Source: Mobula birostris
Lineage: Eukaryota
DNA length: 64,000 nt
Assembly: GCF_030028105.1 (NCBI RefSeq)
Contig: NC_092379.1
Span: forward strand, 28,637,821-28,701,820
Direction: 5' to 3'
Positions 2,391-62,768 of this stretch are shown piece by piece. How positions within the stretch are numbered: position 1 is the stretch's first letter; each line of letters starts with the position of its first letter. Below the pieces are notes generated by a model. It had not been told where the DNA came from. It saw nothing but the letters and a program-made list of their open reading frames with translations, and ran no database searches. The translations under genes and the position numbers were made by a program.

Positions 2391-2578
2391 GGCACCGTCA
2401 CACCGCAAGCAAAGCAACTGTCCAACTACCTGAAAAATGTAGTCGGTAATTTCTCCCCTTTCCCCTGGAGTTTATCCTTCTTAAATTACTCACGTGACAG
2501 TGGTGGATATGTGTTTGTGCTGCGAATGCTTCAGGCAAAGGGTCCCCTGTAGCGAGCACTCACTGCATCACGGAGGTT

Positions 2579-4891: not shown

Positions 4892-5896
4892 CTCTCTCTG
4901 TCTCTCTCTCTCCTATCTCTCTCCTCCCTCTTTTGCACGGATTACGGATTCCATGTGGATGCTCCTGACTGTGGGCCGCGGGTGCCGTCCGTTCCATGCG
5001 CCCATTGTACGCAGGATCTGTTCAGCCCAGATCGGCAATTGTACTGCATTAGGGACGGCTGTTCATGCAAATAGACATAGAAGAACCTGGCACAAAACCA
5101 CTGGAGATATTTGAATCCAACCAGTGGAAATTTCATGTCCAAAAAACCTGAAATCTTCACCTATGTAGTTTGCTACTGAGTTTCGCTCTCATAAGTCAAC
5201 CACATGACTGTTTCAAATACTTGGTTACGCCACTTCGACTTTTCTATCACGACCCGCCCTCTAGCGACGGTTCACTGCATCACACCTTGCACATTCAGTA
5301 TGTGTTTTAAACATAAATTCACTTTGAACAATGACCATTTCTCACAGTCCGGAAATGCAACGACCAAAATACTGTTTGCATTCTCTATCACGCTAAACAT
5401 CCGCAGGATCTGCCGCATTATCTGAATACTCAGTATAAATCATAAGTAGCCACTGCAATATCCTTAATTTCAGCAGCATTACACTTGCTATTCTTTGTCA
5501 AACTGAAGCAGCGAATTTGCCCACGCTCTGTTTTCCTTCAGTGAACCACAGTCCTATTTAAATATATTGCAGTTTCACTCCGTCCATATTGCTTCTTCAT
5601 GCAGAAGCTCGAACAATGTGGCCAAAGACGACGTCATACTACGTTGCCAATCGCGATATGCCGTTGCAGCAAAGAGGATGGGTGAATGCACATTGCCGTA
5701 TCACGGAAATACATTATAAAGATCCAGTCTGGGTGCGCGTTGTAGTCATGAACCGTTCCATTGCCTTCGCCGCCTTCTGTTGGTGACTGCAGCGCTGTTA
5801 ATCAGGGCCCGTGTCCACGGCTGATTTCAGTGTGCGCCCTACCACTTCCCCGGCAAAAGTCGCCTTCGAATGAGAGCTTTTTCATTGTACAGAACC

Positions 5897-5935: not shown

Positions 5936-6374
5936 ATAGTCATTGCACAGAGTCAGAGTCCGATAGTCAGAGTCCGTCACAAGAGCTTTAGCGATATTCA
6001 GTTGAGCTGTCGTGCCGTCTTTCTGCAAACTAGCGGTAAATGTCACTGGACAATCTGGATTCCGCTCCATTTTTCCTGTGCTATAAACCTTCAGCAAATG
6101 CTTTGGAGATCCTCCACTATGTTGAATGTACCAAAAGGTATCTTCATCAGCGTCAGTGTAATTACAATTCATTGTTATGGTCTGCTCTTCCTTAGCCGTT
6201 ACGTCGGGAGCATCCTGCGACACTGAATCTATCCCAGACGCTCCTGCAAGAAAGGACTGAATACATTAACATCGCTAGCTTGTATTGAACACCGGGGAAA
6301 TTCGCGGGCCACCTTAGCAGAGACTCACCAGACAGCAAAGCCAAAGAAATTATTAATAAACAGAGTGAAACCAT
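5936..6374 (-). pseudogene. TCR V segment, probable pseudogene (open frame, disrupted YLC motif)
   Basis: Good leader MVSLCLLIISLALLS|G (6374-6329) and splice sites; exon starts at 6243. A local duplication gives DSDYRTLTLCNDY instead of DSAMYLCA. Confidence 0.8.
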
Positions 6375-12700: not shown

Positions 12701-12967
12701 AGCGAACCCACATTCGCTAGACAGCTGTTATCGACCGCGCTATGTAAAGCCCCAGTTTGGGTGCGCGTTGTAATCAGGAACAGTTCCTTGAGCTGCGGCG
12801 CCCTGTGCTGCTGATTGCAGCTCTCTGAAGTAAGGCAGCAAACCATGGCTGATTTCCGGGTGCGCCCTTCCCACTTTCTGGGCAAAAAGATGCGCTCAAC
12901 TGAGAGCATTTTGCATTATTCAGGACCAGTTTTTCGTACGGACCCGCCATCTGCATTCAACTATATG

Positions 12968-14416: not shown

Positions 14417-15246
14417 GGTGTCTGGTTTCAAGGGCGATCTAAATCCAGATTACATACAAGAAGCTAAAACCACAGATTTGAAAGAATGTTATCAGATACG
14501 TTGCACAGTTCATTTCGTGTAAAATTTGCGAACATTGCTCTGCTAAATGGGAATTGAACCGGGGAAGGCACAGCTGAGCCTGTTTAGCCACCGATCTGAC
14601 TGGAACTACTACACTCTGTTTAGTTCTATATTTCTGTTCTACTTGTCGATCTCAACCCTCATCTCTTCGTTCCTTCTTTCTCCTATATTTCTGTCCGTGT
14701 CACTTGATCGCCCTCTTTCTGCCTGTATATTCCAATCTCCATTTTTTCTAAATCACCAATGCAGATTTTAACTAGTTGTGGGAACATCGTTTAATCCAAT
14801 TCCAGTCCACTAGGGATTCATTTTCAATCCGAAAGATAAACATCCATTTATCTACACTTTGACGAAGCTAATGCTAATAGGCGCCATCTGAAATTTATCT
14901 TCATCTAAGCATTTAGTGTTACAGCTAATAGGATGCTGTCTGGTCATATACATCCTCAGTATCTCCGAGTTGCACTCGTCTTCACTGCTAATCCCTCAAG
15001 GTAGAGAAAAATTATGTCCAGCAAAATCAATAGCCACAAGATATTGTTATAGGCAGGAAGGAGAGACATGGTCACCAAGATGTAGTGGAATTGTTCCGGA
15101 AATCTGCCACGATATCTCTAGGTAAAGCTAAATTTAAGAAGGGTTCCACAAAGGTGGGCGCATTTTGCTGCTGAATGCAGCGTTTTAAGTTGACCACGTG
15201 ATCCTCATGCTCTGTGCGTGCGGCTATTCCAGTTCCTCAGCAAAAG

Positions 15247-15260
15247 TCGCCCTCTAGTGA
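15247..15260 (-). promoter_or_regulatory. CTCF-like motif 12 bp downstream of the RSS nonamer
   Basis: TCACTAGAGGGCGA. Confidence 0.6.
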
Positions 15261-18100: not shown

Positions 18101-20207
18101 CTCGATGCCAACTGGAAAGAATACCGCCGAATCCAGTTGGGGATATCGGTATGAAAAGAATACTTCATACTGACTGCAGCATCGAAATAGTGACTGCTGA
18201 TTCCTCTCTCGCTTTTGAACGAGCCATATCAGTCTCTCATGTATTAGGAAGAGTGAGAGAGAATGCCTGTGTAACGTTGAAATGTTGCAGTAAACAGCTA
18301 GCTTTTGTTGTACTGTAGACCAATTCCTCTTTGAGTTTGTAGTTGTTTCGATGGCGGTTGGTGGTGGAAATGCTGATGCTATAAGTGAGAGATGCAGAAG
18401 CTGGTCAGGTTAATGCTGCTTGCCGCTGATTGTGCGAGGGATGTGACAGGGGACTTTTAGATTCTTATCTTTTTTTTGATATTGTTTTTATTCTGTTTTA
18501 AGGACGTCTGTGGAGACTGAATTTCAGGTTGTGTATTTTGTACCTCTCTGACTTTAAGCGGGACCATTGAAACAAGCTGGGCATTCCTTTCGCTGTACCC
18601 TGGTACATCTGACAACAACAAATATATAATAAATATAAACCATTTTGATGTAACTGTGAGCGTCTGCAAAGTGAAGGAATATATCAGGCTCTCCTTCATT
18701 AGTCCATTGAACATGGGTTGAGCCGGAAAGTGGCTGTGGTGGTGGACTGCAGAGTGCCTATCATGACATCCTGGCGTTATCTGGTGTCATCTTCCAGGGA
18801 TTCGGTTCGATTTTGACCTTCCGATGCTGTCAGCGGATCGTTCCGTGCTCAGCTTCCACAATTCCCGAGTTGTTATGTTTTCCACTGCCCGAAAACGACG
18901 CTCTGGGTAGCACGTGCTCGTGATCGGAGGATCAGTGAATGCTCATCTGAAGAGGAATTTGCGAAATTGGACAGATAAATCAGTTGATAATAAGACCATA
19001 AGATATTGGAACCGAAGTAGACCATTTGTCTTGTCGAGTCACCTCCGCCATTTCAGAGGAGAAGGTGTCGTGATGGAATTATTCAATACACTATACATAC
19101 AATTAAAATGAAATTTCAAAAAGTCGAAATATACCTTTGGAAACAGATGCTATCAGTTTGTGCTTCTTCGACAGTAACCGGACGTTTTCACTGTCTATCT
19201 CTTCCATCGGTGAGAAAACACAAAGTTCTCAAAGCAAGATCCCATGAAACAACAATAGACTATTCCTACTTGCAAGAGTACTAAACTGTAGGGTGAAATT
19301 GAATCTTAATCTCGGTATGACCATGCTGTTTATTTCCTGCCTGCGCTGCATTTTATACGTCTGTTGCGTTTTATTTTTGTATTCTTTTAATCTTTTACTT
19401 TGTACTACCTCGATAAGCTGTGTACTGAATGCATCTGTGTAAACAGAATCAATGCAATGATGCGACAATAATAAACAAATTCCGTTTTCAATTTAGATAT
19501 GTAGCAAAATGCTACACGTGGTGATAACATCGGATCCGTTAAATCGGATTGGGAAACCAGATTATACAAGCAATCAATCTGTTGTGATCCCATCCCCTCT
19601 CTCTTCCTTCGCTCTCTTTTATACTGAAAATGCCTTCAAAAATATGAATCTCGGGGTACTACGCTGTCACGTATATTTCTTTAATCATAATTTTAATTCA
19701 AACATTGAACGTTTTTCTGACAGCTTGGAAATGCAACGACCAAAATAGTATCTGCATTCTCCAACACGCTAAGCATTCGCAGGTTCCGCCGAATTATCTA
19801 AATACTCAGTATAAATCATAAGTAGCTGCTGCCACATCCTTAGTTTCAGTAGCATGCCACTTGCAATTATTTGTCAATTCAAAAACGACCAATTTTTACA
19901 CCCTCTGTTTTTCATCAGTCAGCCATTGTGCCATTTAAATAAATCCCGGTTCCACTCCGTCCTCATTATTTCACACTGCAGATACTTGAACAAAGTGGCC
20001 AAAGACGATGTCAAACAAGGCTGTCAATCGTGATATGCCTTTGCAGGAAACGATGGTGGGCGATTGCACATTGCGGTATCCCAGAAAGTTATAAAGCTCA
20101 GTTTCTGACCGCGTTGTAATCAGGAACTGCTCCTTTAGTTTCGGTGCCTTCTGCTGCTGAATGCAGCGCTCTTAATTAGGGCACGTGACTGTGACTGATT
20201 TCTGGGT

Positions 20208-20249: not shown

Positions 20250-20273
20250 GAGCTTTTTGCAATATACAGAACC

Positions 20274-20312
20274 AGTTTTTGCACGGACCCGCCGTGCCCA
20301 TATAACAGTGTG
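20274..20312 (-). other. 23-RSS
   Basis: CACACTG + 23 nt + GCAAAAACT, directly after the V exon. Confidence 0.9.
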
Positions 20313-27778: not shown

Positions 27779-28724
27779 GAAACTTCTGGAATGCCTGGTT
27801 CGCTGCTGTTGTTACTGTGCGATTGAGAATCTCCGAAGGGTAGGCCCCAAAGTCCCTGGCTTTGCCTGCTGCTGGCGAACGAGGCTGGGGTCGAAACGTT
27901 CGGACAGAGATGGTGCTCGGTACTCGGTGTCGGAGGGCTGACCAGAGCTCGAAGTTTTCGGACGACTCAGAGTCGCACTGTGGTCGGGTATGGCAGGGAG
28001 AGTCTTCTTCCGTCTCTCGTCTCCGTGCTTCCATTTCCAACATCATATCTCTGAGAAGCGGCTTTTCTGCAATGAATGCAAATGAACACTAAATTGCGGA
28101 ATAGACGGGACATAAGGAACCCCCTTATAATTGACGTATCACTATATGCATGCGAGGAAAATATGCGCTGTGTGTTTAATATTAAATTCGTTAGATAAAC
28201 CCTTTTAGAAACGAAATTGTGATTAGATTAGATTATTAGATTATGAGGACACGCAGTCCTCTTATATTGTCATTTAGTAATGCATGCATTAAGAACTGAC
28301 ACAATATTCCTCCGATGTGATATCACAAAACCACAGGACAGACCAAGATTGAAAAAAATAACAAAACCACATTATTATAACATATAATTACAACAGTGCA
28401 ACAATACCATAACTTGTTAAAGAGCAGTCCATGGCACAGTAAAAAAGGTCAAAGTTTCTCGAAATTCCCGCATCTCACGGAGACGAGAGACGGAAGAAAA
28501 CTCTTCCTGCCATACCCGACCACAGTGCGACTCTGAGTCGTCCGAAAACTTCGAGCTCTGATCAGCCCTCCGACACCGAGTACCGAACACCATCTCTGTC
28601 CGAACGTTTCGACTCCAGCCTCGTTCGCCAGCAGCAGGCAAAGCCAGGGACTTTGGGGCCTACCCTTCGGAGATTCTCAATCGCATAGTAACAACAGCAG
28701 CGAACCAGGCATTCCAGAAATTTC
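27779..28724. repeat. Inverted repeat, 249-bp arms (27779-28027 / 28476-28724)
   Basis: Direct reverse-complement match with few mismatches; two near-identical ORFs on opposite strands in the ORF track. Confidence 0.95.
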
Positions 28725-30690: not shown

Positions 30691-30848
30691 TGGATGACAC
30701 AATCAGTCCCGCAAGCAAAGCAGCTGACCAACTAACTGAAAAATGTCGTCAGTAATTTCTCCCCTTTCCCCTGGAGCTTCGCCTTCTTAAGTCAACCCCG
30801 TGTCAGTGGTGGATATTTGATTGCGCTCCGGCTGTTTTCCCGCAAAGT

Positions 30849-30862
30849 GCTCCCTCTAGCGA
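30849..30862 (-). promoter_or_regulatory. CTCF-like motif 23 bp downstream of the RSS nonamer
   Basis: TCGCTAGAGGGAGC. Confidence 0.6.
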
Positions 30863-30885
30863 GCGCTCACTGTATCACGGAGGTC

Positions 30886-30924
30886 GGATTTTGTCTGGAG
30901 ACGTCATCACCTTGCAACACTGTG
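30886..30924 (-). other. 23-RSS
   Basis: CACAGTG + 23 nt + ACAAAATCC. Confidence 0.95.
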
Positions 30925-31357
30925 GGCATCATGGCACAAAGATAAACGGCGGAGTCCGACCCAAGAACACCAGAGATATTCAAATGGGCTGCCTTGCTGC
31001 CAGGCTGCCAACCAGCGATAAACCTCGCTGGACATTCTGGATGCCGTTCCATCGTGCCAGTGCTATATACCTTCAACGAATATCTCGGAGATTCCACGCG
31101 ATGCTGAACGTACCAAACAATAGATTGAGGATCGCCAGTGTAATTACAGTTCAGTGTTACAATTTGTTCTTCCGCGATCGTTAATTCAAGAGGCCATTGC
31201 GTCACCGAATCTTTCCCATTTGTTCCTGCAATAAAAGGACAGAGTGCATGAACAGATCGGGCTTTCTTCGGACATACCGAACACATATAGGGCGTTACCG
31301 CGGAGACTCACCGGGTAGCATAGTCAATATAATCATCAGACAACACAGAGAATTCAT
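30925..31357 (-). CDS. Intact TCR alpha/delta-type V gene segment (leader 31357-31312, V exon 31225-30925)
   Basis: Leader MNSLCCLMIILTMLP|G with GTGAGT donor, 86-nt intron. Open 301-nt exon GTNGKDSVTQWP...LNCNY...VWYVQ...DSAVYLCAMM. Canonical heptamer. Confidence 0.92.
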
Positions 31358-34205: not shown

Positions 34206-35477
34206 GTATCTATCTCTCTTCTATCTATCTCTTCCCTCGTTTCCTCGTTTGCACGGATTCACTGCGGATCTTCTAATTGGCAAACATTTATCCACGCATC
34301 AGTATATTCCTCCTTATACGAATCTGCTACTAGGGGTTGTGGGTATGTTGTAGCTCTTGTCTCCCTGCCCCTTCACCCTCTTGTAGCCCCTGATCAGGGA
34401 GGTTGTGTTTTCTCCTGAGGACGGGGCGTTGTTCGATGTTGTGCAGGATGCGGTGGGCAGCGGACGCGCTCCATTCCAACAGCCCGTTGTACGCAGGATC
34501 TGTTCAGTCCAGATCGGCAATCGCACTTCATTAGGGAGGGCTGAACATGCAAATATACATAGCGGAACCCGGCACAAAACCACTGAAGATACTTGAATCC
34601 AAGCAGTGGCCATTTCATGTCCAAACATCCTAAAATCTTCACCGATGTCGTTTGCTACTGAGTTTCGCTCTCATAAATAAACCACGCGATTCTCGCAAAT
34701 ATTTGGGTACGCCACTTCGACTTTTCTAGCACGGCCCGCCATCTAGCGACGGTTTTCTGCATCACACCTCGCACATACAGTACGTACTTCCAACATAAAT
34801 TCACTTTGAACAATGACCATTTCTCACAGCCCTGGAATGCAACGACCAAAATACTATTGCATTTTCTAATACACTAAACAGCCGTAGGATCTGTCTCATT
34901 TTCGAAATACTCAGTATAAATTACAAGTAGTCACTGCAACATCCTTAATTTCAGCAGCGTAGCACCTGCTGTTCTTTGTCTAACTAAAAACAACGATTTG
35001 CCCACGCTCTGTTTCCCTCATTGAACCACTGTCCTATTTAAATATATTGCAGTTCCACTCCGTCCTTATTACTTCTCCATGCAGAAGCTCGAACAATGTG
35101 ACCAAAGACGACGTCATACTAGGTTGTCAATCGCGATATGCAGTTGCAGCAAAGAGGGTGGGTGAATGCACATTGCCGTATCCCGGAAATACATTATAAA
35201 GATCCAGTTTGGGTGCGCGTTGGAGTCATGAACTGTTCCTTTACCTTCGGCGATTTCTGTTGGTCAAAAGATTGATTGGTAGATCAAAAATAAGCACCGA
35301 TCAGAATAGCCTTTGAGTAGTGTCAAAGTTTCCACTAGTTTTCGGTGTCACTATCTGCCTGAGTGCCTCATCTCTCATATTCCGTCTCCTTTCTCACCAT
35401 ACCGCTCTCAAACACACTAACTCTCTTCCTTAGAATGTATTAACTGTTGCTTGAATTAAGCCAATATTGATTCCAAG

Positions 35478-43685: not shown

Positions 43686-43699
43686 TCAGTAGAGGGCGA
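43686..43699 (+). promoter_or_regulatory. CTCF-like motif in inverted orientation
   Basis: TCAGTAGAGGGCGA on +, inside a 65-bp inversion. Confidence 0.55.
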
Positions 43700-45770: not shown

Positions 45771-47900
45771 GTTTGTAATTATCATGGAAACGGATAGAAT
45801 CAAAGAGGACAGGAAAGTTTTTAGTTGGGGAAAGGCAAATTATGAGAATATAAGGCTAGAACTTGCAGATGTGAATTGGGATGATGTTTTTTTGCAGGGA
45901 AATGTACTATGGATATGTGGTCGATGTCTAGGGATGTAAAGGATAAATTTGTCCCGTTGAGGAAGATAAAGAATGGTAGGGTGAAAGAACCATGGGTGAC
46001 AAGTGAGGTGGAAAATCTAGTCAGGTGGAAGAAGGCAGCATACATGAGGTTTAGGAAGCAAGGATCAGATGGGTCTATTGAGGAATATAGGGAAGCAAGA
46101 AAGGAGCTTAAGAAGGGGCTGAGTAGAGTAATAAGGGGGCATAAGAAGGCTTTGGCGAGTAGGATAAAGGAAAACCCCAAGGCATTCTTCAATTATGTGC
46201 AGAAAAAAAGGATGACAGGAGTGAAGGTAGGACCGATTAGAGATAAAGGTGGGAAGACGTGCCTGGAGGCTGTGGAAGTGAGCTAGGTCCTCAATGAATA
46301 CTTCTCTTCGGTATTCACCAATGAGAGGGAACTTGATGATGGTGAGGACAATATGAGTGAGTGATGTTCTGGAGCATGCTGATATTAAGGGAGAGGAGGT
46401 GTTGGAGTTGTTAAATACATTAAGACAAATAAGCCCCCGGGGCCTGACGGAATATTCCCCAGGCTGCTTCACGAGGCGAGAGAAGAGATTGCTGAGCCTC
46501 TGGCTAGGATCTTTATGTCCTCGTTGTCCACGGGAATGGTACCGGAGGATTGGAGTGAGGCGAATGTTGCTCCCTTGTTCAAAAAAGGTAGTAGGGATAG
46601 TCCGGGTAATTATAGACCAGTGAGCCTTACGTCTGTGGTGGGAAAGCTGTTAGAAAAGATTCTTAGAGATAGGATGCATAGGCATTTAGAGAATCATGGT
46701 CTGATCAGGGACAGTCAGCATGGCTTTGTGAAGGGCAGATCGTGTCTAACAAGCCTGATAGAGTTCTTTGAGGAGGTGACCAGACATATGGATGAGGGTA
46801 GTGCAGAGAATGTGATCTATATGGATTTTAGTAGGGCATTTGACAAGGTTCCACACGGTAGGCTTATTCAGAAAGTTAGAAGGCATAGGATCCAGGGGAG
46901 TTTGGCCAGATGGATTCAGAATTGGCTTGCCTGCAGAAGTCAGAGGGTGGTGGTGGAGGGAGTACATTCAGATTGGAGGATTGTGACTAGTGGTGTCCCA
47001 CAAGGATCTGTTCTGGGACTTCTACTTTTCGTGATTTTTATTAACGACCTGGATGTGGGGGTAGAAGGGTGGGTTGGCAAGTTTGCAGACGACACAAAGG
47101 TTGGTGGTGTTTTAGATAGTGTAGAGGATTGTCAAAGATTGCAGAGAGACATTGATAGGATGCAGAAGTGGGCTGAGGAGTGGCAGATGGAATTCAACCC
47201 GGAGAAGTGTGAGGTGGTACACTTTGGAAGGACAAACTCCAAGGTAGAGTACAAAGTAAATGGCAGGATACTTGGTAGTGTGAAGGAGCAGAGGGATATC
47301 GAGGTACATGTCCACAGATCCCTGAAAGTTGCCTCGCAGGTGGACAGGGTAGTTAAGACAGCTTATGGGGTGTTAACTTTCATAAGTCGAGGGATAGAGT
47401 TTAAGAGTCGCGATGTAATGATGCAGCTCTATAAATCTCTGGTTAGGCCGCACTTGGAGTATTGTGTCCAGTTCTGGTCACCTCACTATAGGAAGGATGT
47501 GGAAGCATTGGAAAGGGTACAGAGGAGATTTAACAGGATGCTGTCTGGTTTAGAGAGTATGGATTATGATCAGAGATTAAGAGAGCTAGGGCTTTACTCT
47601 TTGGAGAGAAGGAGGATGAGAGGAGACAATACAAGAGGACATGGCTTTAAGGTAAGGCGTGGGAATTTCAAGGCAGATATTAGAGGAAAGTTTTTTTTAC
47701 TCAGAGAGTGGTTGGTGCATGGAATGCACTGCCTGAGTCAGTGGTGGAGGCAGATACCCTCGTGAAGTTTAAGAGACTAGTAGACAGGTATATGGAGAAT
47801 TCTAAGGTGGGGGCTTATATGGGAGGCAGGGTTTGAGGGTCGGCACAACATTGTGGGCCGAATGGCCTGTACTGTGCTGTACTATTCTATGTTCTATGTT
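45771..47900 (+). mobile_element. 5'-truncated CR1 LINE nested in a Rex1 fragment; RT ORF 46515-47765
   Basis: 416-aa RT (NYRPVSLTS, GVPQGSVLG, KFADD), (CTATGTT)n tail. Host Rex1 continues at 45600-45770 and 47901-48062. Confidence 0.92.
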
Positions 47901-50687: not shown

Positions 50688-51585
50688 TATTTTTGCATTC
50701 TTCTGGTGCTTCATTTCGTACTGCCTCGATAAAGTGTGCAGCGAATCCATATGTATAATCCGAATTAATGCAATCATGCTGCAATAATAAACAAACTTCG
50801 TTTCCAATTTACATATGTAGCAAAATGCTCCAAGTGGCGATAACATCCGATCCGTTTAATCTACTCGTGAAACCAGATTATACAAGCTGTCACTCTGTTA
50901 TCATTCCATTCCATTTCTCCCTCTCTCCCTCTCTGCTCTGCTGCAAGAATAGTATGCGGTCACGTATGTGTACTTTAATCATAAAGTTACTTTGAGCACT
51001 GAAACTCTTTCTCACCTCTCACCAATGCACGGACGAACATTGTATCTGCATTCTCTATTACGCTAAACATTCGCCGGGTTGGTCGTATTATCTAAATATT
51101 CAGTATAAATCATAAGTAGCTGTTGCACCAAGCTTAACATAAGTAACAAGCCGCTTGCAATTCTTTCTCACTCCGAAGACGGCCAATTTTCCCGCGCTGT
51201 GTTTTCCTTTTGTTAGACATTGTCCAATTTAAATATGTCACGCTTGTCGGCAATGCTCATTATTACTCGTTGCAGACACTCGGAGAACGTGGGCAAGGAC
51301 AATGTCAGGCAAGGTTAGCAATCGTGGTATGCCGTTGCAGCAAAAGAGGGTGGGTGAGAGCACATTGTGCTATCTCGGAGATGCATTGTAAAGTTCCAGT
51401 TTAGCTGCGCATTGTAATCAGGAAATGCTACTTTAGATTCGGCAGCTTGAACTGCTGATTGACGCACTTTCAAGGAGGACACGTCACCACGACGACTATC
51501 TCGGTGCGCCTCTTCCTGTTTCACGGAAAAAAGACACCCTCCAGTGAGAGCTTTTTTTGCATTTTACAGGACCAGTTTTACACAG

Positions 51586-52077: not shown

Positions 52078-53555
52078 GGTATCTAATTTATGTCTAGATC
52101 GAACGGCAGATTTATTCCAGGACGTAATTAACACTCACCAGAAATTGTGGTGTGAGATCGTTTCAGCACTACCTTCACTGCCTGGAAGAACCAAAACCTT
52201 TCCGAGCACCGAACAGAATCAGCTTCGTTGCTATATTGTACACTGCCCGAAAAAGACGCTCTGGGTAGCACGTGCTCGTGATCGGAGGATCTGTGAATGT
52301 ATATGTTAAGAGAAATTTGCGAAATTGGACAGATAAATCCGTTGACAATAAGATCATAAGACATAGGAACCAAAGGAGTCTGTTTGGCTTATCGAGTCAG
52401 CTCCGCCATTTCAGATGAAAAGGCGTCGTGATGGAATTATTCGATACACTAAACATATAATTAAAACGAGATTTTCAAAAAGTCAAATATACCATTGGAA
52501 AAACATACTATCAGTTTGTGTTCCTTCGACAGTAACCGGACGTTTTCACTGTTTGTCTCTTCCGTCGGTGGGAAAACACAAAGTTCTCAAAGCAAGTTCC
52601 CATGAAACAACAATAGACTAATTCCACTTGCAAGAGTATTAAACTGTATGATGAAATTGAATTTTAATCTTGGTTTGACCATGCTCTTTATTTCCTGCCT
52701 GCGCTGCATTTTTATACCTGTTGCGCTTTATTTTTGTATCCTTTTATTCTTTTACATTCTACTACCTCGATAAACTGTGTAGTAAATAAACAGAATCAAT
52801 GCAATAATGCGACAATAATTAACAAATTCAGTTTTCAATTTATATGAGTAGCAAAATGCTGCACGCGGTGATAACATCGGATCCATTAAATCTGATTGGG
52901 AAAGCAGATTATACAAGCAATCACTCTGTTGTGATCCCATTCCTTTTCTCTACCCTCGCTCTCTTTTATACGGAAAATGCCTTCAAATATATGAATCTCG
53001 GGACAGTGTGCGGTCACTTATATGTACTTTAATCATAAACTTAATTCAAACATTGAACCTTTTTCTCACAGCTTGGAAATGCAACGACTAAAATAGTATC
53101 TGCATTCTCCAACACGCTAAGCATCCGCAGGTTCTGTCGAATTATCGAAATACTCAGTATAAATCATAAGTAGCTGCTGCAACATCCTTAATTACAGTAG
53201 CATGTCCCTTGCAATTATTTGTCAATTCAAAAACGACCAATTGTCCCACCCTCTGTTTTCCATCAGTCCGCCATTGTGCCATTTAAATAAATCCCGGTTC
53301 CACTGCGTCCTCATTGTTTCATACTGTAGATACTTGAACAAAGTGGCAAAAGACGATGTCAAACAAGGCTGTCAATCATGATGTGCTGTTGCTGCAAAAG
53401 ATGGTGGGTGATTGCACATTCCGGTATCCCAAAAAGTTATAATGCTCAGTTTGTGTCCGCGTTGTTATCAGAAAATGCGCCTTTAGCTTCGGCGCCTTCT
53501 GCTGCTGAATGCAGCGCTCTTAATTAGGGCATGTGACTGTGACTGATTTCTGGGT

Positions 53556-53597
53556 GCGCCCTCTGCAGATTCCTCGGAAAAAGGCGCCCTCCAGTGA
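53556..53597 (-). promoter_or_regulatory. Two tandem CTCF-like motifs downstream of the RSS
   Basis: TCACTGGAGGGCGC (53597-53584) and TCTGCAGAGGGCGC (53569-53556). Confidence 0.6.
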
Positions 53598-53621
53598 GAG
53601 CTTTTTGCAATATACAGAACC

Positions 53622-53660
53622 AGTTTTTGCACGGACCCGCCGTCCCCATATAACAGTGTG
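53622..53660 (-). other. 23-RSS
   Basis: CACACTG + 23 nt + GCAAAAACT. Confidence 0.9.
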
Positions 53661-54083
53661 GTACTCGTTGCACAGAGATACATGGCTGAGTCCGACACGA
53701 GAGCTTCACGGATATTCAGTTGAGAAGTCTTGCTGCCTTTCACTAAAGTAGCGGTAATCCTCTCTGAATGCCGCTGCGTTCCTCCTGTGCTATATAACTT
53801 CAGCAAATAATTTGGAGGTCCTCCAGTATGTTGAATGTACCAAAAGATATTTGCAGTAACGTCGGTGTAACTACAGTTCAGTGTTATGTTCTGTCCTTCT
53901 TCAGTCATTACATCGGGAGGATCCTGCGTCACTGAATATTGCCCACTCGTTCCTGCAAGAAAGGGACAGAATATATCAACAACGCTGGCTTGTATTGAAT
54001 GCCGGGCAATCTCGCTAGCCGGTATCGTGAGACTCACCAGGCAGCACAGCCAATGCAATCAACAATGAACGGAGGGAAATCAT
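53661..54083 (-). CDS. Intact TCR alpha/delta-type V gene segment (leader 54083-54038, V exon 53952-53661); paralog of 20313-20735
   Basis: Leader MISLRSLLIALAVLP|G with GTGAGT donor. Open 292-nt exon ...LNCSY...FWYIQ...DSAMYLCATS, then a 23-RSS. Confidence 0.92.
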
Positions 54084-56360: not shown

Positions 56361-56491
56361 NNNNNNNNNNNNNNNNNNNNNNNNNNNNNNNNNNNNNNNN
56401 NNNNNNNNNNNNNNNNNNNNNNNNNNNNNNNNNNNNNNNNNNNNNNNNNNNNNNNNNNNNNNNNNNNNNNNNNNNNNNNNNNNNNNNNNNN
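56361..56491. other. Assembly gap (131 N)
   Basis: N run. The paralogous position in unit A (~22030-22150) contains a CT microsatellite. Confidence 0.98.
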
Positions 56492-62200: not shown

Positions 62201-62754
62201 CGACGCTATGTCACTCAATGCTTCTCTGTCTGCCTCTGTATTCCAATCTGCAATTTTAGAAAATCATCAATGTAGCTTTAAACCCGTTGAGGGAACATCC
62301 TTTAATCCAACGCCAGTACACTCCGTATTAATTTTCAAACCGTAAAGTAAACATCCTCTTATCTGCACTTTTAGGAAGCTAATGTCAATAGACCCCAGCT
62401 GAAATTTATCTTTATCAGAAGCATTTAGTGTGACAGAATGTCCAATGCTGTCTGGTCATATGCAACCTCGGTATCTTTAGGTTTCACTCATCTTCACTGT
62501 TAATCCCTCACGGCAATGAAAAATAAAGTCCAGCAAAAAATTAAACACAAGATATTTTTACAAGCAACAAAGAGACATGGACACCACCATATAGTAGAAA
62601 TACTTCGGAAAGCCACCACAATATTCCTAGTTAAATCTAAATTCAAGATGTTTTCCACAAGTTTGGGCGCATTTTGCTGCTGAATGCGCATTTCAAATCG
62701 ACCACGTGATCCCCATGCTTTCTGCGTACAGCTGTTCCAGTTCCCCAGCAAAAG

Positions 62755-62768
62755 GCGCCCTGCAGTGA
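62755..62768 (-). promoter_or_regulatory. CTCF-like motif 12 bp downstream of the RSS nonamer
   Basis: TCACTGCAGGGCGC. Confidence 0.5.

What the first reader, a model, noticed from the sequence alone, without database searches (positions are those of the whole stretch)
30849..30924. CTCF-like sites just downstream of V RSSs, uniformly oriented, in a probable cartilaginous-fish TCR V array
Seen: a CTCF-core-like 14-mer sits at a fixed distance 3' of the nonamer across different V families. Examples: TCGCTAGAGGGAGC (30849, 23 bp gap), TCAGTGGAGGGCGC (20236, 24 bp), TCACTGGAGGGCGC (53584, 24 bp), TCACTAGAGGGCGA (15247, 12 bp), TCACTGCAGGGCGC (62755, 12 bp). Degraded versions occur at 2542, 5860, ~12890 and ~51535. 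All are on the minus strand, pointing the same way as V transcription (toward the presumed D/J). Established: RSS-adjacent CTCF elements at mouse proximal Igh VH genes promote V accessibility during cohesin loop extrusion/RAG scanning, whereas mouse Tcra/d V CTCF sites are mainly promoter-associated. Inference: RSS-coupled CTCF control of V usage may go back to cartilaginous fish and operate at a TCR locus. Caveat: every copy has T instead of the first C of CCAC, so these may be weak sites.
Basis: partly seen in the sequence, partly recalled or inferred. Interest (0 to 1): 0.8.

Follow-up and report, generated by a model that had tools for sequence, protein, structure and literature searches.

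The report
CTCF-like sites behind ray TCR RSSs
Each T-cell-receptor V gene segment in this ray's array carries, just past its recombination signal, a short motif as conserved as the signal itself that looks like a weak binding site for the genome-looping protein CTCF; this layout is known from mouse and human antibody heavy-chain genes, but CTCF binding here is untested.

Summary
All five cited 14-mers and the four degraded copies lie at the stated coordinates, 12 or 23-24 bp past the nonamer. All are on the V (minus) strand; one further copy sits in an inverted fragment at 43686 (+).

The block is a conservation footprint. Across ray families and two little-skate families it is 82% identical, against 77% for the heptamer, 71% for the nonamer and 26% for the DNA between nonamer and motif. 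Contigs of the same species and three relatives show no common variant in it.

The CTCF reading is only partly supported. By matrix score the sites at the three intact V segments are weak (8.5-9.1 bits), and the window holds no site within one mismatch of the CTCF consensus. All three little-skate V segments sampled carry near-consensus sites (16.9-17.3 bits) at the same place and orientation. Family B V segments also carry a stronger, conserved, co-oriented site about 115 bp past the nonamer.

Five bamboo-shark V segments have no such site. Bat, gar and skink TRAV arrays keep CTCF motifs away from the RSS. An origin in the cartilaginous-fish ancestor is therefore not shown. No occupancy data exist.

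This scan reached the same reading earlier on other DNA of this genome (s1-145193, s1-145130, s1-145128). I file it as a new member of a known kind.

The parts
30925..31225 (-). V exon of the intact family A V segment; leader part 1 lies at 31312-31357
   Evidence: Open frame ending in YLCAMM, with a leader ATG and a GT donor. The domain is TCR-alpha-like (for the family B query).
30886..30924 (-). 23-bp RSS of V30936: heptamer CACAGTG, 23-bp spacer, nonamer ACAAAATCC
30849..30862 (-). M1 of V30936, TCGCTAGAGGGAGC, 23 bp after the nonamer
   Evidence: 8.8 bits with the CTCF matrix and 3 mismatches to CCASYAGRKGGCRS. The blastn homology with skate V3446 ends exactly at 30849.
20274..20312 (-). 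23-bp RSS of the intact family B V segment V20324
20236..20249 (-). M1 of V20324, TCAGTGGAGGGCGC, 24 bp after the nonamer
   Evidence: 8.5 bits
20142..20160 (-). M3 of V20324, a co-oriented CTCF-like 19-mer starting 113 bp after the nonamer
   Evidence: 13.8 bits, p below 1e-5
53622..53660 (-). 23-bp RSS of the intact family B V segment V53672
53584..53597 (-). M1 of V53672, TCACTGGAGGGCGC, 24 bp after the nonamer
   Evidence: 9.1 bits. No variant at 20% or more anywhere in 53580-53597 in contigs of the same species and three relatives, and many contigs' homology ends at 53575-53582.
53554..53572 (-). M2 of V53672, a CTCF-like 19-mer that is not conserved
   Evidence: 10.7 bits, but common variants occur at 53555-53565
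53490..53508 (-). M3 of V53672, TCAGCAGCAGAAGGCGCCG
   Evidence: 14.5 bits. No variant at 20% or more in 53478-53508, and contig depth peaks here.
15247..15260 (-). M1 of the family C pseudogene V15323, TCACTAGAGGGCGA, 12 bp after the nonamer
   Evidence: 14.5 bits. The V has stop codons in all frames.
62755..62768 (-). M1 of the family C pseudogene V62830, TCACTGCAGGGCGC, 12 bp after the nonamer
   Evidence: 3.2 bits, because the core AG is replaced by GC
2542..2555 (-). Decayed M1 of the truncated family A V segment V2629
   Evidence: -1.5 bits and 4 mismatches
5860..5873 (-). Decayed M1 of pseudogene V5945; its M3 at 5768-5786 is the best CTCF match in the window
   Evidence: M1 -4.6 bits, M3 15.7 bits
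12890..12903 (-). Decayed M1 of pseudogene V12979; its M3 at 12796-12814 scores 8.3 bits
51534..51547 (-). Decayed M1 of a V remnant that has lost its heptamer; GGCGC has become GGTGT
   Evidence: 1.3 bits
43686..43699 (+). M1 copy inside an inverted fragment of a family C flank (nonamer plus M1)
   Evidence: 13.6 bits on the plus strand

Best explanation
The 14-mer (M1) is a conserved cis-element that belongs to the V-RSS unit of this ray's TCR alpha/delta-type V segments. It is most plausibly a low-affinity CTCF-binding element. It lies on the V coding strand, 12 or 23-24 bp past the nonamer, so bound CTCF would face downstream, towards the presumed (D)J-C side. In family B it is backed by a second, stronger and equally conserved CTCF-type site (M3) about 115 bp past the nonamer.

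Inferred mechanism, by analogy with proximal mouse VH: cohesin extruding chromatin past a RAG-loaded recombination centre is slowed at the V-linked CTCF. This holds that V's RSS near the centre and raises its chance of synapsis. The element leaves with the signal end when the V rearranges.

Shown here: presence, spacing, orientation relative to V, conservation above the neighbouring flank, and near-consensus counterparts in little skate. Inferred: CTCF occupancy, the position of J-C, and any effect on V usage.
For: - **Conservation between lineages.** M1 is 82% identical across ray families A, B and C and two skate families. The heptamer is 77%, the nonamer 71%, the DNA between nonamer and M1 26%, and bases 15-28 after M1 32% (on alignment A2).
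- **Where homology ends.** blastn homology between skate and ray V units runs from the leader through the RSS and stops at the 3' end of M1 (30849, 20235, 53583).
- **Variants in relatives.** Contigs of the same species and three relatives show no variant at 20% or more in M1 (53580-53597) or M3 (53478-53508). There are 26 such variant positions in 53509-53579. Contig depth peaks on M1 plus the RSS and on M3.
- **Little skate.** All 3 V segments sampled have same-strand CTCF matches of 16.9, 17.3 and 17.3 bits starting 21-28 bp after the nonamer. They are the only hits at p below 1e-5 in that 13.5-kb locus (species named).
- **Enrichment and strand.** The window has 26 hits of 8 bits or more against 12 expected, and 21 of them are on the V strand. 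M1-zone scores beat random 36-position windows.
- **Intact versus dead V segments.** All 3 intact V segments keep M1 at 8.5 bits or more, while 5 of 6 pseudogene V segments have decayed copies.
- **The T at the first position.** It falls on position 1 of the core. The key cytosine C2, contacted by ZF7, is kept (PMC10325916).
- **Match to the known layout.** Mouse VH sites lie 17-19 bp after the nonamer, are as conserved as the RSS, are more conserved than the gap, and share one orientation (PMC6746451).
Against: - Sites at the intact V segments are weak: 8.5-9.1 bits, with 2-3 mismatches to CCASYAGRKGGCRS. The window has no site with one mismatch or fewer.
- High-information positions are broken in intact V segments: core A to G in family B, and A3 and C12 in family A. 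Some low-information positions are invariant. That pattern fits shared descent as well as CTCF-specific selection.
- The whole 200-bp flank is alignable among families and partly with skate, so some of the conservation is slow divergence.
- Five bamboo-shark V segments lack any such site.
It behaved correctly on the bat, gar and skink controls.
- There are no ChIP, EMSA or Hi-C data, and J-C is outside the window.
Confidence: 0.5

Rival explanations
1. Relic. M1 descends from a real RSS-linked CTCF site, as still seen in skate, but the copies in this window no longer bind CTCF. Their similarity reflects paralogy, gene conversion across the V-RSS unit and slow elasmobranch sequence divergence, not current function.
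For: Matrix scores are weak at the intact V segments, and there is no near-consensus site in 64 kb. Six of nine V units here are pseudogenes. The flanks are alignable over 200 bp or more, and a further 600 bp of the duplication unit is shared. Invariant positions include low-information ones.
Against: M1 is far more conserved than the DNA on either side (0.82 against 0.26 and 0.32). It is free of common variants in many paralogues and in three related species, while neighbouring bases vary. It decays in pseudogene V segments but not in intact ones. Gene-conversion tracts would not be expected to skip the 24 bp between nonamer and M1.
Confidence: 0.27
2. M1 is the conserved site of another factor, or part of a composite module. 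The module would be M1, the T-rich CTTT(T)G block just after it, and a CACGTG E-box about 80 bp on. It might act in germline transcription or chromatin opening at the RSS rather than in loop-extrusion control.
For: The 14 bp after M1 are also conserved (0.62). A CACGTG or CACGGG E-box recurs in families A, B and C and is the majority form in paralogues (53532 T>C). The positions conserved within M1 do not follow the CTCF information profile closely.
Against: The skate counterparts are near-perfect CTCF motifs in two diverged families (16.9-17.3 bits, per-site p about 1e-6). The second conservation island, M3, is again a co-oriented CTCF-type match. I found no better-matching known motif. The post-M1 block is not kept in skate V3446.
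Confidence: 0.15
3. Chance resemblance with no biological meaning.
For: Individual sites at intact V segments are only at p about 6-9e-5, and about 12 such hits are expected in the window.
Against: The motif holds the same position and strand at nine V units of three families and at three skate V segments. It is the conservation peak of the flank.
Confidence: 0.02

Closest known systems
RSS-associated CTCF-binding elements of mouse and human IgH proximal VH segments (Ciccone et al. 2019, PMC6746451; functional work reviewed in PMC7930373)
   Same: A CTCF-type motif sits at a fixed short distance 3' of the V nonamer: 17-19 bp in mouse, 19 or 48 bp in human, 12 or 23-24 bp here. It has a single orientation with respect to V transcription. 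It is as conserved as the RSS and much more conserved than the DNA between RSS and motif. Its presence tracks V family.
   Different: The locus is TCR alpha/delta-type, not IgH, and the host is a batoid fish. The motif variant differs: T or G at core position 1, and GGCGC with a CpG at C12, where mouse VH has GACCAGCAGGGGGC. The copies in this window are degenerate. Family B has a second conserved site about 90 bp further on. Binding and function are untested.
Mouse Tcra/Tcrd and Tcrb V-region CTCF sites (Loguercio et al. 2018, PMC5859386; PMC10772921)
   Same: Many co-oriented CTCF sites lie among TCR V segments, mostly pointing to J-C (129 of 144 in Tcra/d).
   Different: In mouse Tcra/d the sites lie mostly upstream of V promoters or between genes, and in Tcrb only 2 are near an RSS. 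My bat, gar and skink TRAV controls fit this picture: their strong motifs lie 600-1700 bp from the RSS. In the ray and the skate they abut the RSS, and none was found within 1 kb upstream of the three intact V leaders.
RSS-linked CTCF motifs noted by this scan elsewhere in the same genome (s1-145193 in the same locus; s1-145130 and s1-145128 in a TCR beta array)
   Same: The same layout and orientation; s1-145193 reports the same 23-24 bp distance and weak-site character.
   Different: Those are other stretches of DNA. The TCR beta sites are reported about 40 bp from the RSS. I did not re-examine them.

Membership tests
RSS-associated CTCF-binding element | Sequence matches the CTCF core motif (CCASYAGRKGGCRS / JASPAR MA0139-type matrix) | tested here: inconclusive
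   M1 scores 8.5-9.1 bits at the intact V segments, 14.5 at one pseudogene and below 4 at the others. M3 scores 13.8-15.7 bits. Skate counterparts score 16.9-17.3 bits. No window site has one mismatch or fewer to the consensus.
RSS-associated CTCF-binding element | Fixed short distance 3' of the V nonamer | tested here: met
   23-24 bp in families A and B and 12 bp in family C. In skate the core starts 24 and 31 bp after the nonamer.
RSS-associated CTCF-binding element | Uniform orientation, pointing from V towards (D)J-C | tested here: inconclusive
   All nine V-linked copies are on the V coding strand, and 21 of 26 matrix hits are on that strand. J-C is not in the window, so its direction is inferred from V orientation.
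RSS-associated CTCF-binding element | Motif more conserved than the DNA between it and the RSS | tested here: met
   0.82 against 0.26 identity between lineages. No common variants in M1 across paralogues and relatives.
RSS-associated CTCF-binding element | CTCF/cohesin occupancy in developing lymphocytes and in vitro binding | not testable with these tools
RSS-associated CTCF-binding element | Mutation changes usage of the linked V | not testable with these tools
   This needs genetics or repertoire data.
TCR alpha/delta V gene segment | V-set domain closest to TCR alpha V, split leader, and a 23-bp RSS | tested here: met
   The best 60 solved-structure matches are TCR alpha chains. The leader has ATG and a GT donor. 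Alpha and delta use cannot be told apart from the window.

The most novel reading that the evidence does not exclude
The module 'V, RSS, forward CTCF site within about two helical turns' is ancestral to jawed-vertebrate antigen-receptor V segments. It would then be shared by descent between TCR V segments of batoids, occasional ray-finned-fish V segments and mammalian proximal VH. In that case CTCF/cohesin-guided presentation of V RSSs to RAG would date to the origin of V(D)J recombination, with promoter-side sites as a later relocation.
Probability: 0.12. Interest if true: 0.85.

Novelty: new member of a known kind. Interest (0 to 1): 0.55.

Why it matters
RSS-abutting CTCF sites are the clearest sequence signature of loop-extrusion-guided V choice, and they have been described and tested only at mammalian IgH. 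A conserved counterpart at TCR alpha/delta-type V segments of a ray and a skate makes the age and generality of that mechanism testable. Cartilaginous fishes are the oldest lineage with V(D)J recombination, and the ray and skate now supply defined probe sequences and loci. The contrast with bamboo shark (no site), and with bat, gar and skink (sites placed away from the RSS; upstream of the V in the bat), suggests the position of V-linked CTCF sites is evolutionarily labile. Full-text searches of open-access papers found none linking CTCF to shark or skate TCR recombination signals.

Tried and rejected
- **Protein word-index searches.** Searches with family B and family A V exons found nothing. 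Relatives came from the exhaustive representative search.
- **Failed look-ups.** Two proteins, one of them the Callorhinchus protein P0062, were not on record as genes. No chimaera locus could therefore be examined.
- **First read-laying run.** The 801-bp stretch gave a truncated variant list. I treated it as suggestive only and repeated it on 221 bp, where the list had no truncation notice.
- **CTCF upstream motif.** The TGCAGTGAG just 5' of M1 in family A and skate is only 3 nt from the core, which by my memory of published spacings is too close. Rejected.
- **Second RSS.** The 12 and 23-24 bp gaps after the nonamer resemble RSS spacer lengths, but the nonamer has the wrong orientation. M1 also lacks the CAC/GTG end needed for a heptamer on either strand. 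The 12-bp form is a deletion relative to families A and B. Rejected.
- **Other factors.** I compared E2F, REST/RE1 and PAX5 consensus sequences by eye against M1 and M3. None fitted better than CTCF.
- **Structured RNA.** No Rfam family reaches its gathering score anywhere in the window.
- **CpG content.** The flanks are not CpG islands: observed/expected is 0.5-0.95 against 0.72 for the window. This gave no extra information.

Full report
**What is in the window.** The window holds a minus-strand array of nine V-RSS units.

- Three are intact, with a split leader, an open V exon ending in YLCA and a 23-bp RSS. Their Cys codons are at about 20324, 30936 and 53672.
- Six are pseudogenes or remnants, at 2629, about 5945, 12979, 15323, about 51600 and about 62830.
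- The family B V domain matches TCR alpha chains best among solved structures.
- The closest relative found in public proteins is a V prediction from little skate, Leucoraja erinacea.
- By 3' flank the units fall into three families, A, B and C, which are 50-58% identical to each other.

- The degenerate 14-mer pattern occurs six times against 0.06 expected.
- The gaps from nonamer to 14-mer are 23 bp (30849), 24 bp (20236, 53584) and 12 bp (15247, 62755). Degraded copies follow the other four V units.
- The one plus-strand copy (43686) lies in an inverted fragment of a family C flank.
- The copies are paralogues, so the real question is whether the block stands out from the rest of the shared flank.

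**Conservation relative to the flank.** It does stand out, by four tests.

1. In an alignment of all nine flanks, the block I call M1 is the between-family conservation peak, at 0.74. The nonamer is 0.65.
2. I then aligned ray families A, B and C with two diverged skate families. M1 is 82% identical between lineages. The heptamer is 77%, the nonamer 71%, the spacer 57%, the DNA between nonamer and M1 26%, and bases 15-28 after M1 32%.
3. blastn between the skate locus and the window aligns the V units from the leader through the RSS and stops at the last base of M1 in all three intact V segments (30849, 20235, 53583).
4. I laid Logan contigs of the same species and three related species on 53470-53690. 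No variant with a share of 20% or more falls in 53580-53597 (M1). There are 26 such positions in 53509-53579. Many contigs lose homology at 53575-53582, and contig depth peaks on the RSS plus M1.

Ciccone et al. describe the same pattern for mouse VH: the site is as conserved as the RSS and much more conserved than the 17-19 bp between them (PMC6746451).

It behaved as expected on controls. Thresholds are 7.85 bits for p = 1e-4 and 12.79 bits for p = 1e-5.

| Site | Score or result |
|---|---|
| M1 at the intact V segments | 8.5, 8.8 and 9.1 bits |
| M1 at pseudogene 15247 | 14.5 bits |
| M1 at 62755 | 3.2 bits |
| M1 at the other four pseudogenes | -7.3 to 1.3 bits |
| Mismatches of the five cited M1 copies to CCASYAGRKGGCRS (consensus as quoted in PMC6746451) | 2-3; the four decayed copies have 4-5 |
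| Window sites with one mismatch or fewer | none |

Family B has G in place of the core A. Family A breaks A3 and C12.
- The T itself is less worrying. It falls on position 1 of the core, while the key cytosine C2, contacted by ZF7, is retained (PMC10325916).
- The window has 26 hits of 8 bits or more against 12 expected, and 21 of them are on the V strand.

Family B flanks carry two more co-oriented CTCF-like 19-mers.

- M2 starts 49 bp after the nonamer and scores 10.7 bits. It is riddled with variants in paralogues and relatives, so I do not regard it as constrained.
- M3 starts 110-113 bp after the nonamer. It scores 13.8, 14.5 and 15.7 bits, the best scores in the window. It is a second conservation island, with no common variant in 53478-53508 and a depth peak there.
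- Both conservation islands of the flank thus coincide with same-strand CTCF-type matches. That is the best in-window argument for CTCF over some other factor.

**Other species.**

| Species (locus) | V segments with a CTCF match just past the RSS | Where other strong matches lie |
|---|---|---|
| Little skate (L002) | 3 of 3, at 16.9, 17.3 and 17.3 bits, starting 21-28 bp after the nonamer, same strand | None: these are the only hits at p below 1e-5 in 13.5 kb |
| Bamboo shark (GCA_003427335.1, identity confirmed) | 0 of 5 | No strong hit in 45 kb |
| Unidentified shark-like metagenome-assembly contig (L003) | 0 of 1 | No hit; only about 90 bp of flank is present |
| Bat | 0 of 2 | Co-oriented, about 690 bp before the heptamer, upstream of the V exon (promoter side) |
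| Gar | 0 of 8 | Co-oriented, 600-1700 bp from the nearest V |
| Skink | 0 of 8 | Co-oriented, 600-1700 bp from the nearest V |
| Bowfin | 0 of 2 | Weaker and mixed-strand hits, 620 bp or more from any V heptamer |
| Paddlefish | 1 of 2, at 15.3 bits, 44 bp after the nonamer | Several strong, mostly co-oriented sites; the nearest lie 600-860 bp from a V heptamer |

- One skate family reads TCACTAGAGGGCGC, with the same T as the ray. The other reads CCTCTAGAGGGCGC.
- The RSS-abutting position is thus seen in the two batoids and sporadically elsewhere. On this small sample it cannot be called ancestral to cartilaginous fishes.

**Intact versus dead V segments.** All three intact V segments keep M1 at 8.5 bits or more. 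Five of six pseudogene V segments have decayed copies, partly through CpG loss (GGCGC to GGTGT at 51534). This fits selection tied to V function, but the numbers are small (one-sided Fisher p about 0.05, by hand).

**Mechanism.** A forward CTCF motif directly 3' of the RSS on the V strand places the cohesin-blocking side of CTCF towards whatever lies downstream of the V segments. If J-C lies there, as deletional joining requires, the layout equals that of mouse VH. [quoted passage not shown] My best reading, at confidence 0.5, is a low-affinity RSS-linked CTCF element, reinforced by M3 in family B. It would slow loop extrusion past a RAG-loaded recombination centre and so present that V's RSS.

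The rivals are:

- a decayed relic kept similar by paralogy and slow divergence (0.27);
- a site for another factor within a module that also holds a T-rich block and a CACGTG E-box (0.15);
- chance (0.02).

**Novelty.** Full-text searches of open-access papers found none linking CTCF to shark or skate TCR recombination signals. The kind of element is known from mammalian IgH, so this is a new member of a known kind. This scan had already reached the same reading on other DNA of this genome. Those notes are s1-145193, 626 kb upstream in the same locus, and s1-145130 and s1-145128 in a TCR beta array. I did not re-test them.

This report adds:

- the M3 site;
- the contig-based footprint;
- the contrast between intact and pseudogene V segments;
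- the comparison with bamboo shark, paddlefish, gar, bowfin, skink and bat.

Noticed in passing
window 20182-20187, 53530-53535, 15195-15200, 62703-62708, 2491-2496, 30797-30802: An E-box (CACGTG, or CACATG/CACGGG in some copies) recurs about 80-90 bp after the nonamer in families A and B and about 70 bp in family C. In paralogues and relatives the majority base at 53532 restores CACGTG. It may form a module with M1 and M3.
   Followed up: partly
window 5252-5270 and 34734-34752 (minus strand): A fourth CTCF-like 19-mer (CCGTCGCTAGAGGGCGGGT, 10.7 bits, and a variant at 11.7 bits) lies in a 600-bp repeat, 5000-5600 against 34482-35080, 86% identical. Parts of this repeat also follow V53672 (53021-53320), V20324 (19680-19962) and the V remnant at about 51600. 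The V duplication unit therefore extends at least 900 bp past the RSS.
   Followed up: partly
L002:3478-3491 (skate) and window 30857-30870: A 14-bp perfect palindrome, AGTGAGCGCTCACT, overlaps the 5' half of the skate V3446 CTCF-type site. Ray family A has it with one mismatch. Its meaning is unknown.
   Followed up: no
window 5940-5975 (minus strand): V5945 has a short tandem duplication (GACTCTGACT...) just before the conserved Cys codon. It replaces the Y-x-C motif in an otherwise open V exon.
   Followed up: no
window 27860-27878 (-) and 28625-28643 (+): The identical 19-mer TCGCCAGCAGCAGGCAAAG occurs in inverted orientation 750 bp apart. These are probably the arms of an inverted repeat or a transposon.
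   Followed up: no
window 46473-47551: This stretch is 67% identical over 1.1 kb to bamboo-shark L005:257-1335 and 75% identical to the ENA contig L003. It is likely a conserved interspersed repeat, and GC skew there is strongly positive.
   Followed up: no
window 53598-53611, 20250-20263, 15233-15246, 30835-30848: The 14 bp right after M1 are moderately conserved (0.62). They hold a CTTT(T)G/CTTTGC block that faintly resembles a TCF/LEF half-site. The block is not kept in skate V3446.
   Followed up: no
window 56361-56491: A run of 131 N (assembly gap or mask). Left untouched.
   Followed up: no
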